This document shows positions 31,801 through 63,702 of a stretch of DNA of 64,000 bases, piece after piece; position 1 is the stretch's first letter, and the number at the start of each line of letters is the position of its first letter. The translations under genes were made by a program, and so were the position numbers. This stretch comes from Lytechinus pictus. Its lineage: Eukaryota. The notes beneath the pieces are model-generated. The model saw only the letters and a program-made list of their open reading frames with translations. It was not told the origin of the DNA and did not search any database. Location of the stretch: positions 2,728,001-2,792,000 of the forward strand of contig NC_087251.1 in NCBI RefSeq assembly GCF_037042905.1. Reading direction: 5' to 3'.

Positions 31801-34800
31801 CTACATTTTCATGGTAAAGAACTGGTAAACTTTGAAGGATTCTACAAAAAAATCACAAGAATGAAGATCTGTTTAGCCTACTTTTCTCATTTGAATACTG
31901 TGCATGAATAACAAGACTAGATATGGACATATTTTTAATGTTGATGTACATGTATCTTAGTGGATCATCATCAAATTCCTAACCACCACAATCATCAGTA
32001 CTGCCATTATCATTTAAGTATTAACAACCACCTCAATCCTTATAACATCATCACCAGATTCACCACCACCTTCATCCCTACTACAATCACAACCACCCCA
32101 CCACCACAATCACAACCACCAATTACCACCACCACCANNNNNNNNNNNNNNNNNNNNNNNNNNNNNNNNNNNNNNNNNNNNNNNNNNNNNNNNNNNNNNN
32201 NNNNNNNNNNNNNNNNNNNNNNNNNNNNNNNNNNNNNNNNNNNNNNNNNNNNNNNNNNNNNNNNNNNNNNNNNNNNNNNNNNNNNNNNNNNNNNNNNNNN
32301 NNNNNNNNNNNCACAACCACCCCCACCACCATTATCACCACCACCACCACAATCACAACCACCCCCACCACCACCATTATCACCACCACCACCACAATCA
32401 CAACCACCCCCACCACCACCACCACAATCACAACCACCCCCACCACCATTATCACCACCACCACCACAATCACAACCACCCCCACCACCACCATTATCAC
32501 CACCACCACCACCACCACAACCACCCCCACCACCATTATCACCATCGCCACAACCACCCCCACCACCATTATCACCACCACCACCACAATCACAACCACC
32601 CCCACCACCACCATTATCACCACCACCACCACCACAATCACCACCACCCCCACCACCATTATCACCACCACTACCACAACAACCACAACCAAACGAAAAC
32701 CATTATCATCACCACCAACACAACCATCCCCACCACCACCACCATTATCACCACAATCACAACCACCACCATCTCCACCACCATCATCTCCATCTCCATT
32801 ATCAAATTCACCTTCATCATTATGAATAACCTCTTATGTAATTGAATATAGCTGATTAAGTTTAATACTAGTTGACAATAATATTTGAAATGAGTCTTCT
32901 ATGGTGCATCATAATAAACCAGGGACAGGAATCAGGGGCCTGTTGCATGAAAGGGTCTTTCGTAGAACCGTTCTACGTAAGAACGAGATATCGCTCAAAT
33001 GTTTCACAAAGCCAATTTGGGCGATACGAAGAATGGTCCTTGGAAAGACACCTCCAGACATGTCCTACGTAGGCATGATCTTCTTTTGACACCGCCCGCC
33101 ACCGACGGCAAGCCACACTGACATGTCACCTTTAAACATTTTTTTGGGGGGTCATTCGAGTGCACTCTCATGCATTTTATCTGGGATGGCGCCAAGTCAT
33201 TTTTTATATGGGGCAAATTGTCTTAGACGACCCAAAACGGATGTCATTTTACCTTCTCTGGGGTATAGGCCCAAATAATCTTTTTATAATGTTTTCTTTT
33301 ATTCTCCCTCCTGTCTTTTTCCCCACCCCTTTTCCATTTTTTTTTCAATTAAACTTGAAATATCGAAATGGGCGGCAATCTCTCTGACACAGATTATTAG
33401 ATAAACAATATGAAAACAAATTAAAAAAAAAAAATTATGTATGGTAATAAAAGGTGTTTATAACGTTCAGAAAAAAAAAAAAAAAAAAAAAAACACGATA
33501 CAAAACTAAGATGTTACTTAACATGCTAAATCATTTATTTCTTTTCATTTCATTTTCATTACAATTTTTTTCTGCTGAGATGAAAATTAATTGATGGCTA
33601 ACTTCAGGTGGTGAATGAAACAAAATGAGAATCTACAATAATAACATAGCTGAATTTAAGATATAGATTAGGCCTATAGCTTACGAATCCATCACAATCA
33701 TTACAAATGAAGATAAGTTCATTGTACCAATAAAAGAAAAGATTATGAAAAGTCCATTTTAAATCGTAGGGTAGGCCCTATCGGCCCCTAGCTATGTCAT
33801 GTTAAAGCAATAATGTAGTCTCGACTCCTTAACTTGGAAATGTTACACATATATATATTTTTTATATTCTTAAAGCTTATATTCTTATATAAACTTCCAT
33901 AAAGTTATCAACTTTAAATATGACCAACGTTTATGATTGTTGTCATTTTAGCATTGTTTATGTAAATAGTATTTTTCCATTGCGGATTGATTTCACACAT
34001 TTTTCTATGTTTTATTCATTGCAAAGCATTACTTTACCCACTTGGACATGTTTGCAACAATTTTCATATTTTGCTTGTCTTCGGTTACTCATCATGCAAA
34101 GGTATGTTTATACTCTACAACACTCACATTTGTATTTCTTGCGTTATATCTGACAAATAAAATAAATTAGATTTTTCACGCGCAGCCTCTCATATTTTCC
34201 TTTTTAGTCTCATACAATCAGACACGTTGACTTTGTTTACTCCAATTCAAACCCTATTTTTACCTCAACAAATAACATTTAATGCATAATTTGCAAAATT
34301 ATCATTATAAATAAGTATTTTATAAAAAAATCAGAATACTGAACTAAAACAATGTCAAAGTTACTTAATTAATTCAATTTTTATGTCGGACAATGGTCTC
34401 TTTCGTCGAAATATCAATGAAAGGTGTCTCTAAAAGGACACCGTGTTCTAAATAAGGGAAATTTATAATGAAAATTTTGATTTTATCCAGTTATGTTTGT
34501 GAATCTTTCAAGTTTTTTCTCTTTTTACCTCATAAAGTAAGCTCCATACATCAATTCTACAATCAGTTATAAATAAAACATTATTTGATCTCAATTTATT
34601 GAAATATGTGATTTCATGAAAGTCGTCAGTCTGAAATAAAAGGTTCAGGTGACGATGAAGACTAAATATTTTTCAGACACTAAAAAAAAACAAAGTCGCG
34701 GACTTGGAAGACAAAATTGCCTTCATGAAACGGAAAGCGCTGATTTGTCGCCAATCTTCCTATCTCGGAAGAATGGTCCTACATGTAGGACGTTCCTACG

Positions 34801-44100: not shown

Positions 44101-47100
44101 TTTGCTTCTCAATTTTTCAAAATGGCAAGGCTTCACACTAACTTTTTTTCTTGGTGGCCCAATCAGTCGTCCACCAAAATCATCTATTTCATATTTTTGT
44201 TGGCCGGCAAAGCAAATTTAGTGGCCCTAAATTTCTAAAACAGAAAACATAACCATTTATCAAAACTTTGGTAGCCCGCGCCAACTGGGCCACCAAGTGT
44301 TTTTTACAGAATTTTGGTGGCCCGATTCTCATTTTTGGTTGCCCCGGGCCACTGCTAATGTCAAGCCCTGCAAATAGTCTAGCTAGGCCTATATCTATTT
44401 AAAATCAATTGTCCAGACACGCAACACAGATAGGCTCAGTCCCATTTCTCGACACTGTCTGACTCTGAGTCACTGTCATAATTTTATAGTCTTTCTTGTA
44501 GAGTAATAGACCCTAGACATACTATATTTGGTTGAGGCTATTACAAACACACATGACATTTGTTCAGCTGAAATCAATCCTCCAGTTATTTAGAGCTAAG
44601 TATTAATGCTTGTTATGAATGTTACATTTTGTATTATTTTCAGGGTAAATTTGAGTTGATAACGGGATGTAATGCAGCAGCTACAGATCTAGAGCTCTAT
44701 ACATCAGAAGGAAAGTTAGTTGGACCTATCAATAATGATGATGCTTTGTTAGGATCTTACCCAGTAGAGGATGGAATGAGGATTCATGTGAGTTGGTTTT
44801 GTTTTATTTAGCTTTATTTGCTTTGATTACACAGGTATATACATGTATATGGTCATTTTCATAGTAATGGTCTAAAGGATGTAATTTATAAAAAATAGTC
44901 AACATTTCAACAACAAAAAATATATCATTATAAGCATTTCTTCTAAAATCGATCAATTTTTTAAATCATTCAATCCTTTTTGTTCTAGAGCTTAAAGTAC
45001 ATGAAAAACATTTTAAAAATAATATTGAACTTTGAAATTTATATAATAAAGTTGGACAAATCATGATTTTGTTTTAACTCTTAAAAACCTGTTTTCCAAG
45101 GAAACGTTGAAAGCATTATGCCTATTCATCTGACATTGCATCTAGGTTTCTGGTGTGAGCTGTGTAAAATATAGAGCAATGCAAACATGTACAATCTGTA
45201 GTCTAACATCAACTTAAATTTCCAGAAATCAATCAGAGTAAAAAAAGAAAGAATATTCCACATTTTCATTGTATTTTACAACCAAATACTAGAAATTCAT
45301 TCAAGGAATAATGGACAATAGACAAGACACTCCATGGATGTGAGAATGTGAAATGTAAATTTTCGAGATTTTTTTCTGTGACTTCAATATTTTCTGGGCA
45401 TGACTTTTCCTTAAAGTGATCATTTCACTTTGTTCTGATTTAAAAAAAATCTCATTTTGGTTCTTGAAAATGGGCTAAACATTAGGCTTACTTAATATAG
45501 TGTAAAAATACCATCCTGACAGTATCATATCTAAAGGAATTATTTTAAAACTTCGGAGATGTAAACCAAAGTTTGAAAATAATTGGGGGTTGGTTTGATC
45601 GACTATGTGTATACAACACAAACTCTAGATGAAACCAGCATGACCTACATACAGTGTGTAGTGTGTACAAGGTGCACTGAATGTACAGAGCAGCTAATGA
45701 TAGTGTGTGCATTATCAGCATAGGAGATACACACAGCAGAAGGGAGTCAACACAGCTAACAGACTTTTTGAATGTGAGAAAACTGGGCATAACCTGAATT
45801 CTTCTTACAGACGGTTCTCAAAATCAGACTAATAAATTGCTACTTTTGTCTAAATTAGAGTTTTTCATCCTACAGTGTGTATTATGGTCTGTTTAAGGTT
45901 TTTTTAAGGACAAATACAAGCACTCATACACATGTTTTATCTTGGTTTGACAATTTTTTTATATCAGCTGCTCAGAAAGTGAAACAATCCCTTTAAGGTC
46001 TGCACGAGTTTGTGTTGTGCTTATGCTTACATGCACTCTAATTTGACTTTGAATTGTAGGCAATTGTTTTAGAAAACAACAGAGTGCCTCTTGAAAATTG
46101 TTATGGGGTTATTAAATATCCATATCAAATCTTATTTTTTATTGAATCTAATTTACCTTTACATACAGGTAATCAATAGGGATACCAACAGAGCTGCAGG
46201 GGAATTTGAAGATGTCTCAAAGGTGGAAAAATTTGAGATTTCTCAAGATGAATACGATAAAAGATCAGGTGAGTATAGTCCCCGGAATGAATATAGAATG
46301 CTACCAATGCACAAGTATTCTTTAACAAAGAGAGAGTAGATGTGTAGTTTTCTGAATGGTTTGCAGAGTTGTCAGTTTACAGGCCTTGCCTAATGTCATG
46401 CCCTGACCCATTTCAGGCTTTGCCAAGTTTTATATTGTTTAGCATATTTGGGGTGTTACCATGTTCTGGCTTCTTCACAAGCCCAATGAGAAAAACTGAC
46501 TATCATATACCTGTATTATTGTTCAAGTTTCATGATCTTAATTACCGGTACAATATTTTTAAAGTTAACCTATTGCTTTTACCTGGCAGGTTCTGCATCT
46601 AGAAATTCACCTACGTACATGTATTTAAGCATTACAACCTCAAAAATGCCACATGTTATATTGAAAAGAGAGTGATAATATAATTCATTGATTATTTCTT
46701 CCCAAATATTGGGTGAAACAGATTCTGTGCGAGCATTCAAGAAGAAAATGAAGATGGGACAATTCAAGGAGGTGAGTCCTGAGGAACAAGCAAGGATAGA
46801 TGCAGAGAAAGAAGAGAAAGCAGCAGAAGAAGAAAGACTTGCTAATGCTATTACACTGGAATCAAGATGTGAAATTGCTGTACCTAATGCACCACCTACT
46901 AAAAGAGGAACTGTCAAATTTGTTGGTAAATTAAAGCTGTCTCTTTTAAAAGTTTATTTAAAGGAGAATGAAACTCTTGGAGCAAGTTAGCTTTTGTGAA
47001 AGCAGAAAAATCAAAGAATAAGATCAACAAAAGTTTGAGTAAAATAGGACTAGCAATAGAAGAGTTACGAGCATTTGAATGTCGAGATCACTAATGCTAT

Positions 47101-49043
47101 GGAGATCCTCCCATTGGCAATGCGACCAAGATCTATGATGTCACAGATGAACAACTCTCCCCTTTTGGACACTGAAAATATACCCCAAAACATCTCTTTT
47201 TGCTCATTCTAATCATATGACAAACGATTCATCAATGATATAATGTTGTGAAACCTCTGTACTTGTCCTCTCATAAAGAGAACACCTCACCTTGTGATAG
47301 ACTCTATAAAATTGAGAATATAAGTGAAATAAGTACTAAAGTAACGAGGGAGTTGTACGTGTGTGACATCAAAGATCTTGGTCGCATTGCCAATAGGAGG
47401 ATCTACATGGCATTAGTGATCTCAATATTCAAATGCTCATAACTTTTTTATTATTCATTCAATCTTCCTCAAACTTTCAACAATATGTTTCTTTGATTTT
47501 TCTCTTTGATATGGATTCAGCTGGTTTTGAGGGTTTCATTCTCCTTTAATGTTTTAAGCTTATGTGTATTTTAGTCTATATGTATCATACCTTTCAACAT
47601 TTAATAATGAAATATTATTATTATTATTGTTTACCATTGTTACCTGGATGCAGACTTATGGGGTGTTTCACCAAGAGTTAAGTGTGAATTTGAGTTGCAC
47701 TTAGATGTCATTTGCATGTGGTATATAATACATATCATCAATGGTCAATATAATACATGTACATCTCATTCACACCGGTCCCACACTACTGCATATAAAT
47801 CAATCAGATTATGTGTTCAATAACATGCGTGTTGGCTCTAAGTTACAATTTAATCTTTGTGAAACATTCCCCTGAAGTGATAGTTTGAAGTGAGACGTTT
47901 CAAAGGTAGCAGAGTGACTGAAAAGGGTGGGGGGGCAGAGCTTTGACCATTTGCCATTGTAAACAGTGCACTGGAGTGTATATTGGTTCAAAGAGATCAA
48001 AAGTCATGTACTAACTTAATGGTTCAATCAGGTCACATTGTAAATTAACTTGCAATATTCTACTTGAATTCTTGAGTATGAATTAGGATGGAAACATGGT
48101 CAGTAGCTTCTCTGTGGAGACCTCAGAGTGTACATGTAGTCCGTGATCAAGGTCATGTAAATTTGTCAAATATCTATTAAAAAAAAACACTTTACACACT
48201 TATAAAATCTGCAAAATTCTCAGTATCTTGTAGCTCTTGATGAATTGTAATATGAGCCATGCTATTGTTTGTGTTTATAGGGAAGACAGACTTCAAACCT
48301 GGCTTCTGGGTCGGTGTACAATATGATGAACCTCTAGGCAAGAATGATGGCAGGTTAGTCTTATATATTCTGATAAAAAATCATATTATTACCCCCATTT
48401 ATTAACAAGATGATCAGCTTTTATGTTATGCCGTCATAGCCATTTCTTTCTTTCCCTGCATGAATCCAGCAAATGCATTTTCATCACTTATCCTCACATT
48501 TCATCAGACCAAACAATTTCAAACTGTTGAGCGAAGATGGTCTTATTAGATTTTGAGGTCATTTTTTAAGCCTTTTTTTTTAAATGTATTTTTGGATTGG
48601 CAATGGTGAAGGAATACATTTTGAGCGTGCAGTCAAGAATCTATTTTTTTCTTTTCAAATTTATTTCTATAAACTACTTATATATCTAAATTGCAGACAT
48701 TAACAAGTACATTTTACAACATTGCTTGCATTTTGAGTGTTTCTTTTATATTTATATATTTTATTTGTACATGTATGGTGCTCAGTTCTGTTCTTTTGAT
48801 TCCATAAAGTATACAATGAAAGTTTGGAGAAGTTCCTCAAATAACCAATGCCAGTTATTTTGACTTCTGCTTTCCTTTGTTTTTTATTATAAGTTTACTA
48901 AAATTATTTTCTTTATTTCATTTTCCAGTGTTGGTGGTAAGAGATACTTTGAATGCCCTCCTAAGTATGGTGGCTTTGTAAAACCTCAATACGTGACGAT
49001 AGGTGACTTTCCTGAAGAGGACCTGGATCTCGATGAAATGTAA
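40999..49043 (+). CDS. TBCB: Tubulin-folding cofactor B, 6 exons, 251 aa
   Basis: N-terminal Ubl domain (EKRF...[20 protein letters not shown]), coiled region, CAP-Gly domain with GKNDG motif, C-terminal DEM; phases consistent. Confidence 0.96.
41748..41780. repeat. Perfect 15-bp-arm palindrome
   Basis: CAAAGATGGATTTCC-CTA-GGAAATCCATCTTTG. Confidence 0.85.
42520..42662. repeat. AT-rich near-perfect palindrome (~143 bp)
   Basis: Arm AATTTATAGATAAAAATTATTATTTAACAAATACTAAAAT and its reverse complement. Confidence 0.85.
42800..43790 (-). pseudogene. CR1-clade LINE reverse-transcriptase fragment, disrupted
   Basis: [43 protein letters not shown]; frameshifts and stops. Confidence 0.88.
44126..44370. 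mobile_element. hAT-like MITE
   Basis: Imperfect TIRs CAAGGCTTCACACTA / TAATGTCAAGCCCTG; internal GGTGGCCC repeats. Confidence 0.55.
44644..44787 (+). CDS. TBCB: TBCB exon 2 (GKFELITG...MRIH)
   Basis: AG/GT bounded, Ubl domain. Confidence 0.95.
45415..45992. mobile_element. Kolobok-like MITE
   Basis: TTAA flanks, imperfect TIRs ..TTTCACTTT / AAAGTGAAA.. Confidence 0.6.
46169..46268 (+). CDS. TBCB: TBCB exon 3 (VINRD...YDKRS)
   Basis: Conserved EDVSKVEK. Confidence 0.95.
46722..46925 (+). CDS. TBCB: TBCB exon 4 (SVRAFKK...GTVKFV)
   Basis: Phase 1-1, start of CAP-Gly domain. Confidence 0.95.
46962..47545. mobile_element. Kolobok-like MITE
   Basis: TTAA TSD, TIRs AGGAGAATGAAAC, long subterminal inverted repeats. 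Confidence 0.85.
47659..47872. mobile_element. Harbinger-like MITE
   Basis: GGGGTGTTTCAC..AAGA / TCTTTGTGAAACATTCCCC termini. Confidence 0.55.
48281..48353 (+). CDS. TBCB: TBCB exon 5 (KTDFKPG...GKNDG)
   Basis: CAP-Gly GKNDG motif. Confidence 0.96.
48929..49043 (+). CDS. TBCB: TBCB exon 6 (VGGKRYFEC...DEM*)
   Basis: Terminal exon ending in TAA. Confidence 0.96.
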
Positions 49044-52800: not shown

Positions 52801-54063
52801 TGTGTTATGGTACTTATTGTTTTTAGCACCTCTAACTATCCATATTTATTATTTACTAGTTCTACAAGAGTTTTCTCCAAGACAACCATTCTATGAGCTT
52901 GGGAGGAACTGTTGTGAAAGTGTTTGAGATGGATGAGTTTCCATCGTCCATCATTCAGAGTATAATTCATCAAATTTATCACCTTCTTGGTATAGACACA
53001 TTGGTAAATGATAAGTTATCAGCCACTGGCATGGGCGTACAAACATTTTCTTACACATAAAAACAAAAATGGCATAGGCGAAAGGTCATCACCATAAAAG
53101 AAATCCCCCCCCCCCCCCCATTTTCATCTCCATGTGAACTGATAATTGTTTATTAATTTAAAGTTTCAGGGTGCATTCATATCCCGTTCATATAATAAGT
53201 AATTATATTTAACATCACATTAGACATGGTAGAGATTAAAGCTCACATTCAGAAAAGAGGTTTAAGCCATTTCCTATGCAGATGACCTCCCTCAAATAAA
53301 TTTCATAAAATGTTATTGTGATTTCATTTTACATTGATTTGTACTTTTCAACTGGGCCAGATAATAATAATAATATTTGAAATTTATATAGTGCATAATA
53401 GTTAAAAGACTGCGCTTTACAAAATATATTTAATTACTAAATCATACATTAAACCTTATCTGAATTATACAATAAACCTTAATCTTAAAATACTTAATAC
53501 AAATTAGAACAAATTAAATCAGATGCAACACAAAAATAAATTAAATCAGATGTTGTTACATCACTGTTAAGTTTGTCAGAATCACGTATAATTTACTGTT
53601 TTCTTTAATTTTTGAGTAACAGAAAGTCAGAAAAATCACAAGATGGTGTATCATGAAAGTAACTTTCTATATAAATCTGATGATAGATTCTTTACTGGGA
53701 ATTATTTTCCCATGTTTAGAAGACTCGTCACTGAAACACCCAGTCCTGATTGAACTTGGAACAAGCCTGTTTCGGTCATCAGGACCCTGTCTTACAAAGA
53801 GTTGCGATTGATCCGATCATCTACAAATATGGAAAGCCAGCAACGTCAATATCTAAAATGAATGTTTGTTCAAAATTGTTTCGAGATATATGCTGTATCA
53901 TTCATACATTCATCTTTTTTTTTTTTAGGGGGGGGGATGAAATTCAGTGTGCTTTTTGTTTACAAAAGAGGTGAAAATTTCCTGTAAAATAATTATGACA
54001 TTGATGGATTTCCATAGGCCTATAGCTGAGGTTGATCGACTTTGTAAGACGAGGAGCGATGTA

Positions 54064-54619
54064 TCACACTATCTCGCAATCCTGATCGTAATGTAATATT
54101 TCCTCCCTTGCACAGGCTTGTTCAATCATTTGATGATAATAAATCACAGAAAAACACAGCTATCTTGTAATTCTGATCTTAAATCGTCCACCTTGCTTGG
54201 TACAAACTTATTCTATCATGTGATGATTCACAGAATCTCATCACTATCATGTAATTCGGCTCGTATTTTCTCCATCTTTGCCCAAGCTTGTTTTATCATC
54301 TGATGAATCACAGAAACACATCACTATCATGTAATTCGGCTCGTATTTTCTCCATCTTTGCCCAAGCTTGTTCTATCATCTGATGAATCACAGAAACACA
54401 TCACTATCTTGTGATTCGGCTCGTATTTTCTCCATCTTTGCCCAAGCTTGATCTGATGAATCACAGAAACACATCACTATCATGTAATTCGGCTCGTATT
54501 TTCTCCATCTTTGCCCAAGCTTGATCTGATGAATCACAGAAACACATCACTATCTTGTAATTCTGATCGTAACTTCTCCACCTTGGCACAGGCTTGTCGA
54601 GTCATTTGATGATGTAGAC
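54064..54619 (-). repeat. Tandem array (~7 units, 73-84 bp) of the gene B terminal coding segment
   Basis: Stop-codon positions recur at 54534, 54461, 54388, 54308, 54228 and 54144. Confidence 0.9.
54534..54619 (-). CDS. Gene B terminal exon (LHHQMTRQ...DVFL*)
   Basis: TAG acceptor, phase 1, TGA stop. Confidence 0.7.
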
Positions 54620-57600
54620 CTAATGTAGACTTGTATGCTGCAAATGGAAGTTAATGTTCATTATCTCCTATGAATACAGGAACATAATCTATCTATAATC
54701 TATCTCTACATGTAACTGTACAGTGTGTCTCAAAACCAAATCTTTCTTTTATTGAAGTATTAACATTCTTACAAGAAATCTGATTTTCTTACAAATCACT
54801 TAATCATGATCGAGGAGCACTTGTTTCCTTTTTAACTAACTATTTAACCAGGGGCGGATCCAGCCTTCGCCAATAGGGGGGCCCAGAATTTTTTTTCAGC
54901 CATATTTCCCCGATCGGCTGCTCGAAGATAATTTTTGGTTTCTTTGAAGGGGTAGTCCTAATAGTCACTTCTTAGCTTTATTCTTATAAATCAACATAAA
55001 TATATAATATCATATATCCTTGTATATAATGCGAGCGCAAAGCGCGAGCTAAATTTTTTGGAAATCTGTGTATTTTTCCTAAAATTTGAACATTCTGGGC
55101 AATGTTTGTTATCCTGAAAAAGATATGTGTATGCAATTAAATAATTACAACGAACGCGATGCGCGAGCAGAAATGAACTAATGAAAAAAGTACTCGTTAA
55201 AGACTGCATGCAGTTAGCCATGAAGACGTTATATATTTATTTTAAAATTCAAATAATGCGAGCGCGAAGCGCGAGCTGAATTTTTTTGACATTTTTACAT
55301 AACTTAAGCAGAATAGGTTTATAACTAAACATGCGAGCGCTAAGCGCAAGCGGAAAATTTCTAGATTTAGACCTACTGAACGAGACACTCTATTCATGTT
55401 ATGTAAACCATGAAAAGGATGAGTAGTTGGGGATCTTTCGTACAGTAATAATGCGAGCGCAAAGCGCGAGCAGAAAATTTTTATATACGTTTTGAACTGA
55501 TCGAAAAGGTACCTGTTAAGGACTGCTTGCACTTAGCCATGAAGACTACATATTTCAACAATCAAATAATGCGAGCGCGAAGCGCGAGCTGAAAATTTTT
55601 GACATTTCTATATAAAGAATGGAAAATTTTAATCAATTTTTTGTAATCGTGAACAGGATAGCTATATAACTAAACGCTTGATGCGAGCGGGAAAAAAAAT
55701 CGAGATTTAGACCTAAAAACGGGACACACTATTCATGATTTTTAAATCATGAAAGGAATGAGTAATAGGGGATCTTCCTACATGAATAATGCAAGCACAA
55801 AGTGCGAGCAGAAATTTTTTGATATTTTGTGATCTGAAACTGGATAATGATTTAAATAGAGAACAAGTTGAGTATCTGAATAAACATGCGCGCGTGTTTC
55901 ATATTTAGACCGAGAATCCAGCCATTCTAATCCTTTATCGTGAAAATCAAAGCGAGCGCGAAGCGCGAGCTCAAACTATTTGATATTCCGATCTGAAAGA
56001 GTCAATTTCAGCTCTATATTTCAAGCACTTCCTATTCCTCTTGCTAAGCGCGAGATGAAACAAAAAGGACAATTTAATTATCAAATTAATATCTTATTCA
56101 TTAATGCCTAATGAGGGCGCGAAATCTGATGATATTATGGCCTGAAAACTGGAGAAAAAAATTGTAATTATAAATAGGATGCATCAGTTAATATATTTTT
56201 AACCATTAATGCGAGCGCAAATTGTTAGCTCAAGGAGCTGGAAGCTCCTTGGTTAGCCAAAATTTATTCTAAACTATATGTAATGCAATTTATATTTTGA
56301 TCAATATTGAAAGTAAAAAAGACTATCATGAAAAGGGGACTTTAGAGACATACATAACTCGCCAATCAAAATGCGAGCGTGCAGCGCTAGCTGATACGTT
56401 TTGACAATCAGACCTGAAAAGGGATATTTTGACAACTTTATGGAATACACGAAAAATAGGTACCTGATAAATCAAAATTTGCGAGCGCGCAGCGCGAGCA
56501 GAAAATGTTAATATTCAGACCATAAAACTGACATTTTTACAGAGCACTTTTTAAGAATCAATTTGTAAATCACATAAAATAATGGAAGTTCGGTTTCCGA
56601 GGTGAAATATGTTTGTGTATTGACTTGACTTGATATTTAAACTCCATATTGAACAAGATATGAAAATCACCTTTACTACAGGCAATGCGAGCGCGAAGCG
56701 CGAGCGAAAATATTATATATATTGACATGACAGATTCTTTTTATTTTACAAGTCTTCTTATTTTATTCACTCGTCTTCCTCTTCTTCTTTCTCCTCTCTT
56801 TTCCCTCCTTTTTTCTTGCTTTCCCTTTTTTTCCTTTTTTTTGCTCCGCCAAAAGGGGGGCCCGGGCCCCCCCTGGATCCGCCTATGTTAACGATAAGTG
56901 TAACCAAGTGATTTGGGGGTTTGTTTTAATTGCGGATAAGCCATAAAATAACTTTCAAACTCATAGGCTATTCATCCGTGTGAAGAAAAAAAAGAAAATT
57001 TTGTTGAAAATTTGTATTTTTGCTTACTCTTAATTTTTAACAGTTTTGAATTTCAAGAATCCACTTTTATTTTCATTTTTTGAGAAACTAGAATGAACTG
57101 TGATAAAAATTTCAAAATTTTTGCTCGCTCACAACTTTTTATTGATTTTACATGATACACCATTTCGAGCCCCCTCTAAAATTTTGCCTCATTACTCCAC
57201 TATTAACGTATAAAGAAAAATAATCCACTTTTCCCCCAAACACTAGATGCATCACAGATATTGGGTAATTTACGATAAATAATGTGAATCAATCAGTCAA
57301 TCAGTTATTTTAAATACTGCGATTTTCTGTGGGCTGGGAGCCTCGCATTGTACTCTTTGATTTATTATGAATTATGATTCAATGAGTAGAACAAAGAAGA
57401 TCACAAACCTTTGGCGATGTTCTGAATAATTGGCAAAGCCTCTCGTCGAGTTTGAAGAACGATCGGGAATGGCACTGATGTATTTAATTCACGTGATAGT
57501 CGGGTGAACAGATCTAAATATCCCGGATACTTTCGCAAAGAAGAAAAAAAGAACGAAAATTAAGCAATATACTATTATTACTATCAGATTCTGATATACA

Positions 57601-60102
57601 ACGAATATTTAGAGTGGTCAAAATGGCTTCTACTTGAAGTAAAACGTCGGTTTTATTGAATCTCCGTCTCTCTAATCAGTCATGATGTTGAGACAGATCA
57701 TGGACCTATCAGATCAAAGCAACTTCCAAAATATTATTTGAAAAAGAAAACTAATCATGGATATGTTTTGAAAATGGATAAAAGAACTAATTCGTATTGA
57801 AGGATTACCTTTTCACGAGTTTCTCGAGTTCCTGTATGCAATCTCTTTTTCGTTTTCCATCTGATCATTGATGTTAAAACACCAGCAGTTGATGCTAAAC
57901 CTCCTGTTATAAATATATGACAAATTCAAAATGCGTCATTGTCAAGCATAAATATGTTTAAAAGCCGATCTAATTTCCTTTCGGTTAACGTACTTGTTAA
58001 AACAAAGAGTCAGAAATGTGAATTAAAAAACAAAATGTCATAAAATCTTACAATAGTGTTGTGGTCACTGAAGATTCTTAGCAAGCATGATAAACATACT
58101 TACCACTTTCATCTACATCAGCGTTGTCTGATGTCACTGGTTTCTGAAAGAATAAAAAAAGCAATTTGAGAGGCGCTGGGATTTGATATCGTTAACGGTG
58201 AACAAAACATTGACTGGGAGAAATTTTACAATATATATCCAAATTCAGTGGCATATAGCTAGCCTAAATGGAATGGAGAAGGGGTGATTGTAATGACATG
58301 AATCTGTGTAGATTGAAATTCTTGTCGTTTTCAAGCATCTCAATTCAAATTATTTATTCGTCATCCAATCAACAAGAGCACCTTATTCGTCATCCAATCA
58401 ACAAGAGCACCTTATTCGTCATCCAATCAACAAGAGCACCTTATTCGTCATCAAATCAACAAGAGCACCTTTAGAACATAGCATTGAGTAAACTTTGTCC
58501 TTCATATTCATTCATTATTCAACTAAGTATATAAGAGCAATTCCTTTCGAAGTTTACTGTCTCAGTGCGTTTACAAGACTATTCACTTTATATTGGAATC
58601 GCAAGGTCCCATTTCCTTTTTTCATGTTTGTATTGTTTAATAGTATAGCATAGTATAGTATTTATTTTTCGTATAAAAAAAACAACAACGGATGGATAGC
58701 CCTTATTCAGTTTGGATTCATAAATTATAAGAAGTAACAAAAAAAAGTAAAAAGGAAAACGCACTTTATGGAACTATTCAGTTGAATAAGAACAGAATCA
58801 GTTTGTAATTTAAAGTCTGTTAAGGGAACAATGGGGAGGAGAAGGGGAAGAAAAAAAGCATACAATATTGAGTTTATGACAAGGTAAGCAATGAATACAA
58901 CTAAGAATGCGAAAAAGAAATTATAGTAATGTTTACTTGGTGGCCCTCCCTTTTACTAGGGGGAGGTTCAAAATTTAGTTTTATATTCTATGAAAAAAAT
59001 GCTATTAATAGACATACACTGGTCATGTGCGGCAATCATTTTTTTTTTATTTGAAGGGGATAAATTTTGTGCGTCACGTAGGTGTAATCGAATTTTTACC
59101 TGTATGGATAAATATTTTCAGAACAAAATAATACAGAGACCCTTTTTTAAATCAATCTCCATGCAAGATATACAAACCTTGTCTGCTGAGGCGACCGGAC
59201 CAGAATCCGAACCTACATTAGAAAAAAAATGCATGTATAAGAACCCATGCTCAATTTCGAAAGCATTTTCTAATACAACGCCGCGTGAGATCATTGCCAC
59301 CGCCCCTCCCAAAAAACACATATCTCTAAGCAACTGAAATAATATATGTAAATCTCAAATTGTATTTTGAAACAACTATTATTTGTTACTGATCATTTCC
59401 CTACGATATTAGTTATAACTGAAGTATTTCTTATGACGTATATTTTATTTTTCTGATTATGTATTCATATATGACTTTTGAATTTGTTCGTTGCTATGCT
59501 CATTCTCTAAATATGGAAATTAATAAACTGTCAGACCTTGAAACCATATATCTTACAATCCTTATGAATCCGATTGACCAGAAGATTAATTGAAACACCC
59601 CCAAGAAAAAGCAAATGTCCCATGACTCGCGTCATACGTCCTTGTCGCCTTTCACTATACGACTGATCTCTCCACTAAGGGAGAGATCAGTGTTCACTAC
59701 GTTGCAGGTATGGTCGCAGAATAATTTCGCTACCCGCCCCCCCCCCCCCCCCAGTAATGAAATAAAGATAAAACAAAAGTCAACTTACCCCGCGCGCCAA
59801 GGATTTTTTTCAGGAAAGACATGCCTTTATCTGTGTCGGTTTCCTTGGTTACTTCTATACTTTCCTTCCCTGCTGGTTCTGTAGTAGTCACCTTTTCTGA
59901 TTGAGACACTGAATGCTGCATATCAGATGAGCTTCTTGACCTATCATCATAATTATTCGGAGATTCAATGATCAATGAAATATTTTGATTTTAGGCCTAC
60001 GTTACCGCACTTCCCCCCTCCTATTTTAAATGAATTTGTTTACATAATGACAGAAGCTTTACGGTGCACGTGACGAAAGAGCGATATATTTTACCTTGCC
60101 AT
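54534..60102 (-). CDS. Uncharacterised gene B, 178 aa, 7 coding exons: 60095-60102, 59789-59940, 59178-59212, 58104-58143, 57809-57903, 57409-57529, 54534-54619
   Basis: All junctions GT-AG and in phase (2,1,0,1,0,1). Protein: MARSRSSSDMQHS...GLASTAGVLTSMIRWKTKKRL...YPGYLDLFTRLSRELN...KLRSELQDSDVFL*. Confidence 0.7.
54849..56887. mobile_element. ~2 kb non-autonomous DNA transposon with internal GCGAGCGCGAAGCGCGAGC motifs, in gene B last intron
   Basis: TIRs CAGGGGCGGATCCAG / CTGGATCCGCCTATG; TTAAC on both flanks; ~15 motif copies. Confidence 0.8.
57409..57529 (-). CDS. Gene B exon 6 (YPGYLDLF...NIAK)
   Basis: AG/GT bounded, phase 0-1. Confidence 0.75.
57809..57903 (-). CDS. Gene B exon 5 (GLASTAG...TREK)
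   Basis: AG/GT bounded, phase 1-0. Confidence 0.75.
58104..58143 (-). CDS. Gene B exon 4 (KPVTSDNADVDES)
   Basis: Strong acceptor, GTAAGT donor, phase 0-1. Confidence 0.72.
58354..58469. repeat. 29-bp minisatellite, 4 copies
   Basis: TTATTCGTCATCCAATCAACAAGAGCACC units at 58354, 58383, 58412 and 58441. Confidence 0.95.
59178..59212 (-). CDS. Gene B exon 3 (SDSGPVASADK)
   Basis: Strong polypyrimidine acceptor, phase 1-0. Confidence 0.65.
59789..59940 (-). CDS. Gene B exon 2 (SRSSSDMQ...LGAR)
   Basis: Part of ORF 59730-59975, GTAAGT donor. Confidence 0.75.
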
Positions 60103-60138
60103 GTCGACCTATAAAAAGTTATAATTAGTCGCCATGAC

Positions 60139-60826
60139 GGTAAATTTCGTATAACAACCATTTGGTCCAATCATCACTTCGTCTAATCACCAGTTCGTCT
60201 ATGACAATTTCGTCTCATAACCAGTTGGTCTAAAGGCGACCGCGCACACCTTATATTGGTCTGCGACCCGATTTCAGAATAAAATGTAGTAGAATTTGAT
60301 GCTAATATTGAGACTTGGAATATCTTACTGTGCAATGTTCTAAATCATCGTACGAATATTATGTTCAAATTTGTGACTATGCTGTCATCCTTCTTAGAAT
60401 AAAAGCGAATTTAATATCTAGTCGTAATGACGTCATAGCTGTCGTACGATTGGCTACTCCAAAATAAAGGTTTGCCATCTTTCAAAATGGTTATATTAGT
60501 ATTCTTTCAATTAAGTTTAACCTCAAATAAAATGATTATGTTCCATTTACATTTTCAGAAAATCAGCAAAGTGCGATTTGTTCCAAAATCGGATCGCGAA
60601 CAGTCGTAAGGTGTGCGGTGGCCTTAATATTCGTTTTATTTTCATTCACTTTACCCAATTAACACTTTTTCTATTTTAATTAGACCAAATGGTATATAGT
60701 AAATGGTTATTAGACGAAATGGCAATTAGATCATGTGGTTATTGGACAAAATGATGGTAGACCAAAATGATAGTAGACGAGTTGGCAATTGGACGATTTG
60801 ACATTGGACCAAATGAAAATAAACCG
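60139..60826. mobile_element. Inverted-repeat element with TTCGTCTA/TAGACGAA subterminal repeats
   Basis: Short repeats face each other from the two ends; interrupted by the next element. Confidence 0.55.
60234..60624. mobile_element. PIF/Harbinger-like MITE nested in the previous element
   Basis: TAA TSD; TIRs AGGC.ACCGC..CACACCTTA / TAAGGTGTGCGGTGGCCT. Confidence 0.75.
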
Positions 60827-61196
60827 TCATGACCAGATTTAACTGAACTCACCATGACGGTATAAAACTTCAACTTGGCAAGGTAACTTGACGTATTTCG
60901 TAATGCTTGACTAACTATTTCTACATGACAACACAATTTATTATGTATCACAATAATCACACCATCTCGTCAAGTAGAGCTCCATATAGTATTTACTAAA
61001 TAAAACTTCTTGTTGTTGGCAGCTGAGTGTGGTAATCATCAGTACAACGTTTTATGTACAAACGAAATCATGCTTTAGACATTAGAAGGGTACAGACCGC
61101 GGGTGTCAGACAAGGAGTGCCAAACAGCAGAAAAAAATATCCATCTTATAGGTTACTTTATATAATGATTGATTGGAATCCACCGGATTTCATTTT

Positions 61197-61278
61197 TTAA
61201 AAGTCCCGAAGTTCCATCAACCTTCTCTTCTTCACTCCGAATTCATTTCCCAGCCGGAACAATATGCGGTAATACATA
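61197..61278 (-). CDS. Gene A terminal exon (MYYRILF...RDF*)
   Basis: CAG acceptor, phase 2, TAA stop. Confidence 0.6.
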
Positions 61279-63702
61279 CTGTATGAATATAGATATGAAT
61301 CATGACTGGTGAATGGCGACTGATTTCAACCAAGGATCCGGGTCATATAGGTTCTTATAATGAAATAGTAGGCCTATTCAATTATAACTCCGGTAAAATA
61401 TTGGTTAAAAGCAGTGATGATTATTTCCTATAAAAATTGCCATTGTATTGCAATTTGTCATAATTTATAAATATGGTTCCATCTCAGAGATAATGACTGA
61501 AATGTCCGGGCTCAGATAATGCGCATAAAAGGGAAGATGAAAACAGCAAAGTAAATAAATACCTGTACCTTTTCGCATAATAAATGTATTTGAGTTTGAA
61601 TTTCTTGAATTACGATAGAAGTTTTTTAATCGGTACGATGTCAGACAACGTACTTGTATGATTGCATCTCACATGGTCTGAGTAGACTAACATCGTCTGA
61701 TCCCATAGGTTGATAACGCCCGAGGGATGCTCTCTCTAGTTTGTTACCGCGTGGATCTGTTTGCATTATCTCAGCAACAAGAGACTTCTTGCTCACATGG
61801 TTGTCTTCGCACATTGAAGAAAACAATGGAAAACATTAATTAATAAATTCATTCTTTCATTGTATTATACTGATTTTTAGCCGAGTGACTCATCATCACC
61901 AATAATGATGGGAAGTAAAATAATTTATAACAATGTTAACAAAGCAAAAACGGCTATGCCTACATAAATTATACCGGGTACATGTCGCCTAAAAAAACCC
62001 GCCACCCCCCCCCCCCCCCCCCCCCGTCAGGATCGCTGCCCTTCATAGTTTATGAGCTGGTCCCTATTATTTATACCCAGGCTTCAGATCGAGATAAGAA
62101 AGATGAGGGTGACGTTTTGTGTTTTTGATAAGGTAGTGATTGTGCCAAGTCAAAACAACACACTAACCATGCAGGAAAGGGGTGTGGCGTTTACATCACG
62201 AGGCAAACAGAACTCTTGAGGTTGAGAGGGCCGATTTTTTTTATACCACTTACTGTTTCTTTTTAATGACGTTTTAGCTGCTCTTGATAATGGTATTTAT
62301 AACTTAAACTAATAATGAATTTAAGCACGACATGTGCCATAGTGACTTGTTGGAGCATTCCATGATATAGGACTTGTCGGACTATTTTATCTGACAGTTA
62401 CCATAGAAACACCCCGGGGTAACAACGCTTCTCAGGCAATCAATATCAAGGAAAGTTGTCAGATCCAAAAAAATTCGGACAGAAATAGTAATGATATGCT
62501 CCCCCGACCTCGAATTTAAGAAATTTTCTTGTTCTTACGAACAGCTTTATTGAACACTATCCTGACAACTTGTACACAATATATATATTTATTTTTAAAG
62601 AAAATACCGCGTGGATTCAAAAGAGAGTTGTATTTGGACGCTGATTGTTGATAAATGGCTTCGTCGCTCCCTAAGGTATCATCCAGTCTATTTTTCTCCA
62701 CGGCTGCTCCAACCACTAAAGCCATTAATGGGATCTGAGGTCGTCGTCCAGGAATCGGAGACGATGGTCGTGGCTTCATCGGAGATGCTACTCTTTCAAC
62801 CGGTTTACCAAAATCTAACCTGTTAAAAGAAAAATAAAAGACAACCATAGAAGGAGAACAACACCGGGGATGGTAAAAGGAGAAAAAAATGCTTGGCCAA
62901 TACTGCAAAATAATTAGTATAGGAAGTCGACGTTTAAAGCAAAAATATAGTAGGCCCTAGATCTGTATGGTAGTGTGTTCTAAAGCTATGCGGGTCCTAA
63001 ATAAATCCCAACAAAACAAAAAGTGTGCCTAAAACAAAGTTGAGAAAGAAATCAGACGGGTATGCAAAAAGTTGCGCGGCGGCATCCTCGTTCATCTTCC
63101 AAAAGGTGCACACAGGAGCATAGGCGGATCACGGTGGGTGCACATCCGGCCCGTGTCCCCTCCCCTTCTTTTGAGATCCCTGAAAAATAATTCCTAGTGG
63201 GAAATACGGGGCATAGATAGTCTAGGCTCCAGTAGATCTAGATGTCTACAAAAAGAAAAAATGTTAGGCATAAACAAGCCTCATGATATAGGTCTACCAG
63301 ACACCCCATCGTGAAGAGTGATTCTACTACGGAACCATTAACTCACCTTTGGGATTCATTTTCCGTGTTTTCCTTCTCTTCAGATTCTTTTTTATCTCTC
63401 ACCACGCTTTGTTGTTCCTCCTCTTCATCTCCCCCATCATGCGCATTGTTATCATCTTTTGACTCCTCGGTGGTTGAAGTCATTGACTCGATGGTGATTT
63501 CAGGCACGTTGTTTCGATCCCGTGCAATCCTTAGTTCTTCACCATCCACACCGCCATGATCATCCATTCTCAAAACTCTGTGAGGGTTTTCAGGATCGGG
63601 TGTGGCTGCAAATTGTCTAGGAGGATACCTGATTGGGTTTCCTTCATTCTCTCCGCTTTCCAGCATCGGGTTTTCATTTGGTAGTTCTGTCATATCCTCC
63701 AT
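61197..63702 (-). CDS. Uncharacterised gene A, ~266 aa, 4 coding exons: 63347-63702, 62608-62819, 61654-61804, 61197-61278
   Basis: GT-AG exons with matching phases (2,1,2). Acidic, probably disordered N-terminus; ends MYYRILFRLGNEFGVKKRRLMELRDF*. AATAAA at 60937-60942 (minus). An acceptor precedes the ATG, so an upstream exon exists. Confidence 0.7.
61654..61804 (-). CDS. Gene A exon (NHVSKK...MQSY)
   Basis: Part of ORF 61641-61826, phase 1-2. Confidence 0.75.
62608..62819 (-). CDS. Gene A exon (LDFGKP...LNPR)
   Basis: Part of ORF 62516-62908, phase 2-1. Confidence 0.8.
63347..63702 (-). CDS. Gene A exon (MEDMTEL...NESQ)
   Basis: Part of ORF 63343-63915; acceptor at 63704, GTGAGT donor. 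Confidence 0.8.

What the first reader, a model, noticed from the sequence alone, without database searches (positions are those of the whole stretch)
54064..54619. Last coding exon of an unrecognised gene amplified into a tandem array of intact small ORFs or alternative C-termini
Seen: directly after the gene B stop (minus strand), its own last ~75-80 nt recur about six more times. Four near-identical units read QAWAKMEKIRAE(L/S)(H/Q)DSD(VF/EI)L*, versus QACAKVEKLRSELQDSDVFL* in the real exon. Across the QA..FL segment, the nine differences between the real exon and the consensus unit fall six at codon position 3, three at position 1 and none at position 2. Most replacements are conservative (V>M, L>I, S>A, Q>H; C>W is not). 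Each of the four units has its own ATG, giving a 15-aa MEKIRAE... peptide; the 80-bp units give a 23-aa MI(E/K)QAW... peptide starting 8 nt after the previous stop. Three units also contain an AG in the correct phase (CAG|AT or TAG|AA) to splice onto exon 6. Inference: this could be a polycistronic smORF 3' UTR or a bank of alternative C-terminal exons. The numbers are small, so a neutral minisatellite is not excluded.
Basis: partly seen in the sequence, partly recalled or inferred. Interest (0 to 1): 0.72.

Follow-up and report, generated by a model that had tools for sequence, protein, structure and literature searches.

The report
Terminal-exon-derived 3'UTR minisatellite in sea urchin
The last 80 or so bases of an unannotated sea-urchin gene, stop codon included, have been copied head to tail six more times just behind the gene; the small reading frames in the copies look inherited from the parent exon, not selected, so this is an ordinary minisatellite.

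Summary
Window 54064-54617 (minus strand) holds seven head-to-tail units of 73-84 bp. Unit 0 is the end of a putative last coding exon and includes its stop. Units 1-4 are 94.5-100% identical to each other. Units 5-6 are old and broken by a nonsense codon and frameshifts.

The array occurs once in the 812-Mb genome. A 6-bp direct repeat, TACATC, brackets it, which fits slippage or unequal exchange as its origin.

As a selection test it fails:
- unit 0 versus the consensus unit gives 4 synonymous and 5 replacement changes (P=0.086);
- the four young copies differ only by replacements (L>S, H>Q, V>E, F>I);
- the ATGs and in-phase AGs each trace to one or two mutations that were then copied.

No AATAAA or ATTAAA lies between the stop and 53609, so the array should sit in the 3'UTR if the gene is transcribed. 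I found no RNA evidence: the runs found behave like genomic DNA.

The host gene (my 7-exon, 382-aa model) has no Pfam domain, paralogue or detectable homologue.

Verdict: most likely a neutral 3'UTR minisatellite. Alternative C-termini or translated small ORFs are unsupported but not excluded. Earlier notes of this scan describe the same kind of array at two other loci of this genome (s1-327685, s1-320132).

The parts
54534..54637 (-). Putative terminal coding exon (exon 7) of the host gene. It has a phase-1 acceptor ttgcag|CA at 54638/54637 and a stop TGA at 54536-54534. It encodes A-YKSTLGLHHQMTRQACAKVEKLRSELQDSDVFL*.
   Evidence: In contigs of a related organism the exon has only 2 differences (54567, 54570). 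Both are synonymous third positions. The adjoining 190 nt of intron has 13 differences plus 9 gap letters.
54534..54617 (-). Unit 0 of the array: the last 27 codons plus the stop of exon 7. It starts 21 nt inside the exon at the TACATC motif (54616-54611).
54388..54533 (-). Units 1 and 2 (73 nt each; 54533-54461 and 54460-54388). They are a derived subfamily with a 7-nt deletion, reading SSDQAWAKMEKIRAE(L/S)(H/Q)DSDVFL*. CAG|AT is in phase with the exon 6 donor.
   Evidence: u1 versus u2 is 97.3% identical
54228..54387 (-). Units 3 and 4 (80 nt each; 54387-54308 and 54307-54228), reading HQMI(E/K)QAWAKMEKIRAELHDSD(VF/EI)L*. u3 equals u1 apart from the 7-nt indel. u4 carries V>E and F>I.
54144..54227 (-). 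Unit 5 (84 nt), an old decayed copy. The homologous CAA has become TAA, and a 4-nt insertion shifts the frame. It is 71-79% identical to the other units.
54064..54143 (-). Unit 6 (80 nt), an old decayed copy. It has a 5-nt insertion (ATTAC doubled) and has lost about 11 nt of the tail. Its frame stays open only by chance, and the peptide is not homologous after the shift.
54058..54063 (-). TACATC directly after the last unit. It is the same hexamer that opens unit 0 (54616-54611). This is the microhomology that brackets the duplicated segment.
57409..57529 (-). Exon 6 of the host gene (YPGYLDLFTRLSRELNTSVPFPIVLQTRREALPIIQNIAK, then G of a split codon). The donor is AAAG|gtttgt.
59178..63702 (-). 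Inferred upstream exons 1-5: 63702-63347, 62819-62608, 61804-61654, 59940-59892 and 59333-59178. All are GT-AG with consistent phases. With exons 6 and 7 they give 1149 nt, or 382 aa.
   Evidence: My own model, without transcript support. The exon 1 stop-free stretch of 194 codons is unlikely by chance (about 0.004 expected in the window).

Best explanation
This is a locus-specific minisatellite that grew out of the 3' end of a gene's coding sequence.

Origin. An 80-84 bp segment, made of the last 27 codons plus the stop, lay between two copies of the hexamer TACATC. Replication slippage or unequal exchange between those short repeats duplicated it. This step is inferred.

History. Early copies (units 5 and 6) decayed freely. 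A later copy diverged by about 15% from the coding unit and then expanded recently to four near-identical copies (units 1-4). One subfamily of those carries a 7-nt deletion.

Position. The units abut the stop codon, and no poly(A) signal appears for about 925 nt. If the gene is transcribed, the array is therefore simply part of its 3'UTR.

Reading frames. The small ORFs, their ATGs and their stops are inherited from the parent reading frame and are not maintained by selection. The only likely link to the protein is concerted evolution. The last 21 nt of the coding unit are identical to those of units 1-3, which suggests unequal exchange or gene conversion between the coding unit and the array.
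For: - Head-to-tail units without spacers.
- The array occurs once in the 812-Mb genome. It sits at low, single-copy-like depth between high-copy repeats in four runs.
- TACATC lies at 54616-54611 and again at 54063-54058, bracketing the array.
- Identity shows a young homogenised core beside older units. u1-u4 are 94.5-100% identical to each other. They are 79-85% identical to u0 and 71-75% to u5 and u6.
- u5 has a TAA plus a 4-nt frameshift. u6 has a 5-nt insertion and a truncated tail.
- Selection tests are null. u0 versus consensus gives 4 synonymous and 5 replacement changes, pN/pS 0.31, P=0.086. Within u1-u4 there are 0 synonymous and 4 replacement changes. Combined, 4 synonymous of 13 compares with 2.6 expected.
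- By my reading of the alignment, units 5 and 6 share the unit 0 state at most of the nine sites. Most changes therefore arose once in the ancestor of units 1-4.
- No AATAAA or ATTAAA lies between the stop and 53609.
- The array shows no RNA structure signal (z = -1.41) and no Rfam hit.
- All nine u0/consensus differences lie in the first 42 of 63 nt (P=0.026), which fits a conversion or exchange breakpoint.
- Earlier notes of this scan report the same type of array at two other loci of this genome.
Against: - The codon-position pattern (no change at position 2, mostly conservative replacements) leans weakly toward constraint on the ancestor of units 1-4.
- The internal ATG has a good initiation context (A at -3, G at +4).
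- Three units offer an in-phase AG behind a moderately pyrimidine-rich stretch.
- The identical last 21 nt could also reflect selection for the ...DSDVFL* ending rather than conversion.
- I have no transcript data, so the 3'UTR position is inferred.
- The host gene itself lacks outside support: no homologue and no Pfam domain.
Confidence: 0.75

Rival explanations
1. Bank of alternative C-terminal exons. Exon 6 (donor at 57409, phase 1) would sometimes splice to the AG inside unit 1, 2 or 3. That would replace the 34-residue tail with D/E-QAWAKMEKIRAE(L/S)(H/Q)DSDVFL*.
For: In-phase AGs lie before 54525, 54452 and 54372. By my own count on the sequence, the pyrimidine content upstream is similar to that of the canonical acceptor. 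Mutually exclusive terminal exons that arose by tandem duplication do exist, for example Drosophila pip (PMC9013439).
Against: - The duplicated unit starts 21 nt inside the exon, so it carries no native acceptor, branch site or intron spacer.
- The CAG arose from one A>G change. It is in phase only in the 7-nt-deleted subfamily, which is one event that was then copied. The TAG of unit 3 is already lost in unit 4. These amount to two coincidences at 1 in 3 each.
- The units have no poly(A) signals of their own.
- No such joint appears in the laid contigs.
- The copies differ by radical replacements.
Confidence: 0.06
2. Translated downstream small ORFs. Ribosomes would re-initiate or be recruited in the 3'UTR and make the 15-aa or 23-aa peptides. 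Alternatively, the act of translating these ORFs would tune the main ORF.
For: Four ATG-initiated frames exist, and the MEKIRAE ATG has A at -3 and G at +4. Translated downstream ORFs are documented in mammals (PMC7544200).
Against: - The ATGs come from a single V>M change and from the parent Met codon.
- There is no amino-acid-level constraint among the copies: 0 synonymous and 4 replacement changes.
- The older copies are broken.
- No expression data are available.
Confidence: 0.04
3. Repeated 3'UTR regulatory element. Each unit would multiply a binding site, for example the GU-rich TGTGTTTCTGTGA tail, for an RNA-binding protein that controls mRNA stability or localisation.
For: The array lies in the predicted 3'UTR. 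The GU-rich tail is the best-kept part of units 0-3.
Against: There is no structure signal (z = -1.41) and no Rfam family. Near-identity of young copies is expected without function. Unit 4 already carries changes in that tail.
Confidence: 0.07
4. There is no gene. The 7-exon model would be a chance chain of open frames, and the array would be an intergenic minisatellite whose unit merely happens to be open in one frame.
For: - Exon 5 found nothing among 1.84 billion representative proteins.
- Exon 1 found nothing in two searches.
- No Pfam domain and no paralogue in the genome.
- No RNA run was found.
Against: - A 194-codon stop-free stretch with an ATG in exon 1 (about 0.004 expected per window).
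- Six GT-AG introns with consistent phases.
- In contigs of a related organism, exon 7 carries only two synonymous differences beside a much more diverged intron.
Confidence: 0.08

Closest known systems
Minisatellites / VNTRs in or next to 3'UTRs (for example the 40-bp repeat in the human SLC6A3 3'UTR; from my own knowledge, not looked up here)
   Same: Units of tens of bases lie head to tail without spacers. The locus is unique. There is a homogenised core with diverged edge units, and a higher-order 73/80 substructure. The predicted position is the 3'UTR.
   Different: Here the first unit is itself coding and contains the stop codon. Every young copy therefore carries an inherited open frame and stop. 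Copy-number polymorphism, the hallmark of a VNTR, could not be measured.
Tandem exon duplication giving mutually exclusive or alternative terminal exons (reviewed in PMC9013439, with Drosophila pip as an example; human cases in PMC9741552)
   Same: Homologous copies of a terminal coding segment lie in tandem on the same strand downstream of a shared donor.
   Different: Those duplications copy whole exons with their splice sites and flanking intron, are usually old, and have junction support. Here the unit starts 21 nt inside the exon. Copies abut each other, have no acceptor by descent and no poly(A) signal of their own. The older copies are broken.
Translated downstream ORFs in 3'UTRs (PMC7544200; bioRxiv 10.64898/2026.05.26.727855)
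   Same: Short ATG-initiated frames lie behind the main stop codon.
   Different: The known cases rest on footprints or on conservation of the ORF. Here there is neither, and the frames are explained by descent from the parent exon.
Earlier notes of this scan on the same genome: ELMO 3'UTR minisatellite (s1-327685) and a 140-bp array beginning with a gene's last codons and stop (s1-320132)
   Same: The anatomy is the same: the last codons plus the stop form the first unit of a 3'UTR array. The ELMO follow-up likewise judged its mini-ORFs a by-product.
   Different: They lie at other loci with other unit lengths and copy numbers. I did not re-examine them.

Membership tests
Minisatellite / VNTR | Head-to-tail repeats of a 10-100 bp unit without spacers | tested here: met
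   Seven units of 73-84 nt. TRF gives period 80, 5.2 copies, 89% matches.
Minisatellite / VNTR | Locus-specific, not a dispersed element | tested here: met
   Only self-matches in the 812-Mb genome. Depth over 54092-54682 is low and single-copy-like, between high-copy flanks.
Minisatellite / VNTR | Concerted evolution: a homogenised core with diverged edge units | tested here: met
   u1-u4 are 94.5-100% identical to each other and 71-75% identical to u5 and u6.
Minisatellite / VNTR | Copy number varies among individuals | tested here: inconclusive
   Contigs of other runs break at the repeat. Coverage of the central units is patchy and cannot be counted.
Tandemly duplicated alternative terminal exons | Each copy is a whole exon with its own 3' splice site and flanking intron | tested here: not met
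   The unit begins at 54617/54616, which is 21 nt inside exon 7. Copies abut with no spacer.
Tandemly duplicated alternative terminal exons | Each terminal copy has its own cleavage/poly(A) signal | tested here: not met
   No AATAAA or ATTAAA between 54534 and 53609.
Tandemly duplicated alternative terminal exons | Split reads joining the upstream donor to each copy | tested here: inconclusive
   No run on record as RNA holds the stretch. The laid contigs show no such joint but behave like DNA.
Tandemly duplicated alternative terminal exons | Purifying selection on the copies | tested here: not met
   Within u1-u4 there are 0 synonymous and 4 replacement changes. u5 and u6 carry a nonsense codon and frameshifts. 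u0 versus consensus gives P=0.086.
Translated downstream small ORFs | ATG-initiated frame in the 3'UTR | tested here: met
   15-aa and 23-aa frames in units 1-4. They are inherited from the parent frame.
Translated downstream small ORFs | Ribosome footprints or peptide evidence | not testable with these tools
   No Ribo-seq or proteomics access.
Translated downstream small ORFs | Conservation of the peptide | tested here: not met
   Replacements L>S, H>Q, V>E and F>I among young copies. The old copies are broken.

The most novel reading that the evidence does not exclude
Stop-codon-anchored minisatellites may be a recurrent feature of this sea-urchin genome (this locus plus two others noted by the scan). 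They could act as a reservoir for C-terminal variation. Unequal exchange or gene conversion between the coding unit and the array would rewrite the last codons of the protein; the identical last 21 nt of unit 0 and units 1-3 hint at this. Occasional use of the in-phase AGs would give alternative tails.
Probability: 0.07. Interest if true: 0.55.

Novelty: new member of a known kind. Interest (0 to 1): 0.17.

Why it matters
As it stands, this is an ordinary minisatellite, and its main value is as a caution. When a tandem duplication starts inside a coding exon and includes the stop, every young copy shows an intact ORF, an ATG and a stop. A codon-position bias can also appear on a handful of sites without any selection.

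If the exchange between the coding unit and the array were confirmed, the locus would be a small, clean example of a 3'UTR repeat driving concerted evolution of a protein's C-terminus. The host gene, with no detectable relatives, may be a lineage-restricted gene worth annotating.

Tried and rejected
- RNA evidence. The look-up of sequencing runs returned 23 runs holding only 6-10% of the sampled words, none on record as RNA. I laid four of them on 53501-59400. Their contigs cross the exon 7/intron boundary and pile up on dispersed repeats, so they behave like genomic DNA. No joint from 57409 appears, and there is almost no cover of exon 6.
- Gene identity. Pfam on all exon pieces gave nothing above threshold. 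Searches of the window's own genome with exons 5 and 6 found only the exons themselves, so there is no paralogue or retrocopy to reveal splicing. Exon 5 against 1.84 billion representative proteins gave 0 hits. Exon 1, alone and inside its 194-aa open stretch, gave 0 hits.
- Spliced protein not searched. The spliced 382-aa protein has no reference and was too long to type, so I never searched it as a whole. The nulls say little about full-length relatives, because the search for homologous proteins filters candidates by length.
- Dispersed or TE-borne satellite: rejected.
- Structured RNA: rejected (z = -1.41; no Rfam family).
- My first automatic exon finder was too strict and found only exon 1. 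The model was built by eye.
- One repeat finder failed on a strand argument and was not needed afterwards.

Full report
**What is there.** On the minus strand, window 54617-54064 consists of seven head-to-tail units. Tandem Repeats Finder reports 54214-54612 with period 80, 5.2 copies, 89% matches, and sub-periods of 73 and 153. I cut the strand at each TGTGA and obtained these units:
- u0 54617-54534 (84 nt)
- u1 54533-54461 and u2 54460-54388 (73 nt each)
- u3 54387-54308 and u4 54307-54228 (80 nt each)
- u5 54227-54144 (84 nt)
- u6 54143-54064 (80 nt)

Unit 0 is the end of a plausible terminal exon. That exon has the acceptor ttgcag|CA at 54637 and a stop TGA at 54536-54534.

**The setting.** The window is piece C7:2728001-2792000 of an 812-Mb animal genome. 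Earlier notes of this scan call it a Lytechinus sea urchin (not checked by me). I built a 7-exon minus-strand model, all GT-AG with consistent phases, giving 382 aa:
- exon 1: 63702-63347
- exon 2: 62819-62608
- exon 3: 61804-61654
- exon 4: 59940-59892
- exon 5: 59333-59178
- exon 6: 57529-57409
- exon 7: 54637-54534

Support for the model:
- A 194-codon stop-free stretch around exon 1, with about 0.004 such stretches expected in the window.
- The consistent splice phases.
- A comparison with contigs of a related organism. Exon 7 shows only two differences (54567 and 54570), both synonymous third positions. The next 190 nt of intron show 13 differences and 9 gap letters. Fisher P is 0.095 for substitutions alone and 0.003 with gaps.

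Against the model:
- No Pfam domain.
- No paralogue or retrocopy in the genome.
- No hit for exon 5 among 1.84 billion representative proteins.
- No hit for exon 1.

The gene is therefore unannotated and possibly lineage-restricted. I could not search the spliced protein as a whole.

**The array is local and unique.** A search of the whole genome with units 1-4 found only this locus. In four public runs the array and exon 7 lie at low depth, between flanks that reach depths of hundreds to tens of thousands. Those flanks are dispersed repeats at 53698-54091 and 54683-57046. It is not a satellite carried by a mobile element.

**How it arose.** The hexamer TACATC opens unit 0 (54616-54611) and recurs directly after the last unit (54063-54058). 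This is the footprint expected if the first duplication came from slippage or unequal exchange between two short direct repeats that happened to bracket the last 27 codons and the stop. The unit boundary is thus set by microhomology, not by the exon. It begins 21 nt inside exon 7, so no copy inherits the exon's acceptor, branch site or any intron.

Pairwise identities give the order of events:
- u1-u4 are 94.5-100% identical to each other; u1 and u3 are identical apart from a 7-nt indel.
- They are 79-85% identical to u0.
- They are 71-75% identical to u5 and u6.

The distal units are the oldest. A later copy of the coding unit diverged by about 15% and then expanded recently to four copies. 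The 80-nt form is ancestral, because u0, u5 and u6 all have the 7 nt. The 73-nt form (u1, u2) is a derived subfamily.

**Is there selection on the small frames?** Reading the alignment by eye, units 5 and 6 share the unit 0 state at most of the nine sites. Most changes therefore arose once, in the ancestor of units 1-4. Everything the four units share (W, M, I, A, H, the ATG, the CAG) is one lineage's history, not four observations.

The selection tests give the following:
- By Nei-Gojobori counting the nine differences are 4 synonymous and 5 replacement, over 12 synonymous and 48 replacement sites. This gives pN/pS 0.31 and P=0.086 for at least 4 synonymous of 9.
- Among the four young copies all four differences are replacements: L>S and V>E at position 2, F>I at position 1, H>Q at position 3. 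None is synonymous.
- Combined, 4 of 13 changes are synonymous against 2.6 expected.

The older copies are broken. u5 has TAA in place of the first CAA and a 4-nt insertion. u6 has a doubled ATTAC (+5 nt) and a truncated tail, and its frame stays open only by chance.

The in-phase AGs are equally weak evidence. The CAG comes from one A>G change (CAAATG to CAGATG). It is in phase only where the 7-nt deletion occurred, and that deletion was then copied once. The TAG of u3 is TAA in u4.

**Where the array sits in the transcript.** The first AATAAA or ATTAAA hexamer after the stop is ATTAAA at 53609. Another ATTAAA follows at 53434 and an AATAAA at 53154. None lies within the array. If the gene is transcribed, the array is 3'UTR. 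It shows no fold signal (z = -1.41) and no Rfam family.

**Transcript evidence.** None was found. No run on record as RNA holds the stretch. The four runs I laid behave like DNA and show no joint from 57409. This does not show silence.

**One detail worth keeping.** All nine differences between u0 and the consensus lie in the first 42 of 63 nt. The last 21 nt, GAT AGT GAT GTG TTT CTG TGA, are identical in u0-u3, synonymous sites included, while u5 differs there (P=0.026). The simplest reading is an exchange or conversion breakpoint, meaning that the coding unit takes part in the array's concerted evolution. Selection for the ...DSDVFL* ending is the alternative, but u4 already carries V>E and F>I there.

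**Comparison with known systems.** The locus meets the tested criteria of a minisatellite: spacer-free 73-84-nt units, a unique locus, and a homogenised core with decayed edges. Copy-number polymorphism could not be measured. It fails the tested criteria of tandemly duplicated alternative terminal exons, as reviewed in PMC9013439, and of conserved downstream ORFs.

The scan has noted the same anatomy at two other loci of this genome (s1-327685, whose follow-up also judged the mini-ORFs a by-product, and s1-320132). I did not re-test those.

**Verdict.** The functional interpretation is not supported. The best explanation is a neutral 3'UTR minisatellite derived from the terminal exon (confidence 0.75). 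It is a new member of a known kind, of low interest.

Noticed in passing
window 46679-49040 (+): A CAP-Gly-domain gene lies on the plus strand. The CAP-Gly domain is split over exons at about 48256-48402 and 48864-49040, and the protein ends ...[10 protein letters not shown] at 49040. By my recollection it looks like tubulin-folding cofactor B. It converges tail to tail on the host gene of the array, leaving about 5.5 kb for both 3'UTRs.
   Followed up: partly
window 53698-54091 and 54683-57046: High-copy dispersed repeats flank exon 7 and the array. Summed contig depths reach hundreds to more than 80,000 in four runs, with many loose ends at 53778-53786 and 53819. Intron 6 is largely repeat-derived.
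   Followed up: no
window 59733-59940 (-): Exon 4 has two possible donors. The short form (AAG|GTGACT at 59892/59891) keeps the frame into exon 5. The longer donor (CGGG|GTAAGT at 59789/59788) would leave exon 5 out of frame. Read-through past that donor runs ...MSFLKKILGARGKLTFV... into a G-run and a stop near 59733.
   Followed up: partly
window 54111-54306 versus run X7: A 478-nt contig of a related organism aligns to units 4-6 with 15 mismatches and 17 gap letters. It has the same depth (6.22) as the contig over exon 7 in that run. If both pieces belong to one contig, that individual would have far fewer central units. I could not resolve this from the table.
   Followed up: no
window 32001-34000: A 174-N gap lies at 32138-32311. 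The 2-kb bin containing it has a strong GC skew of -0.47.
   Followed up: no
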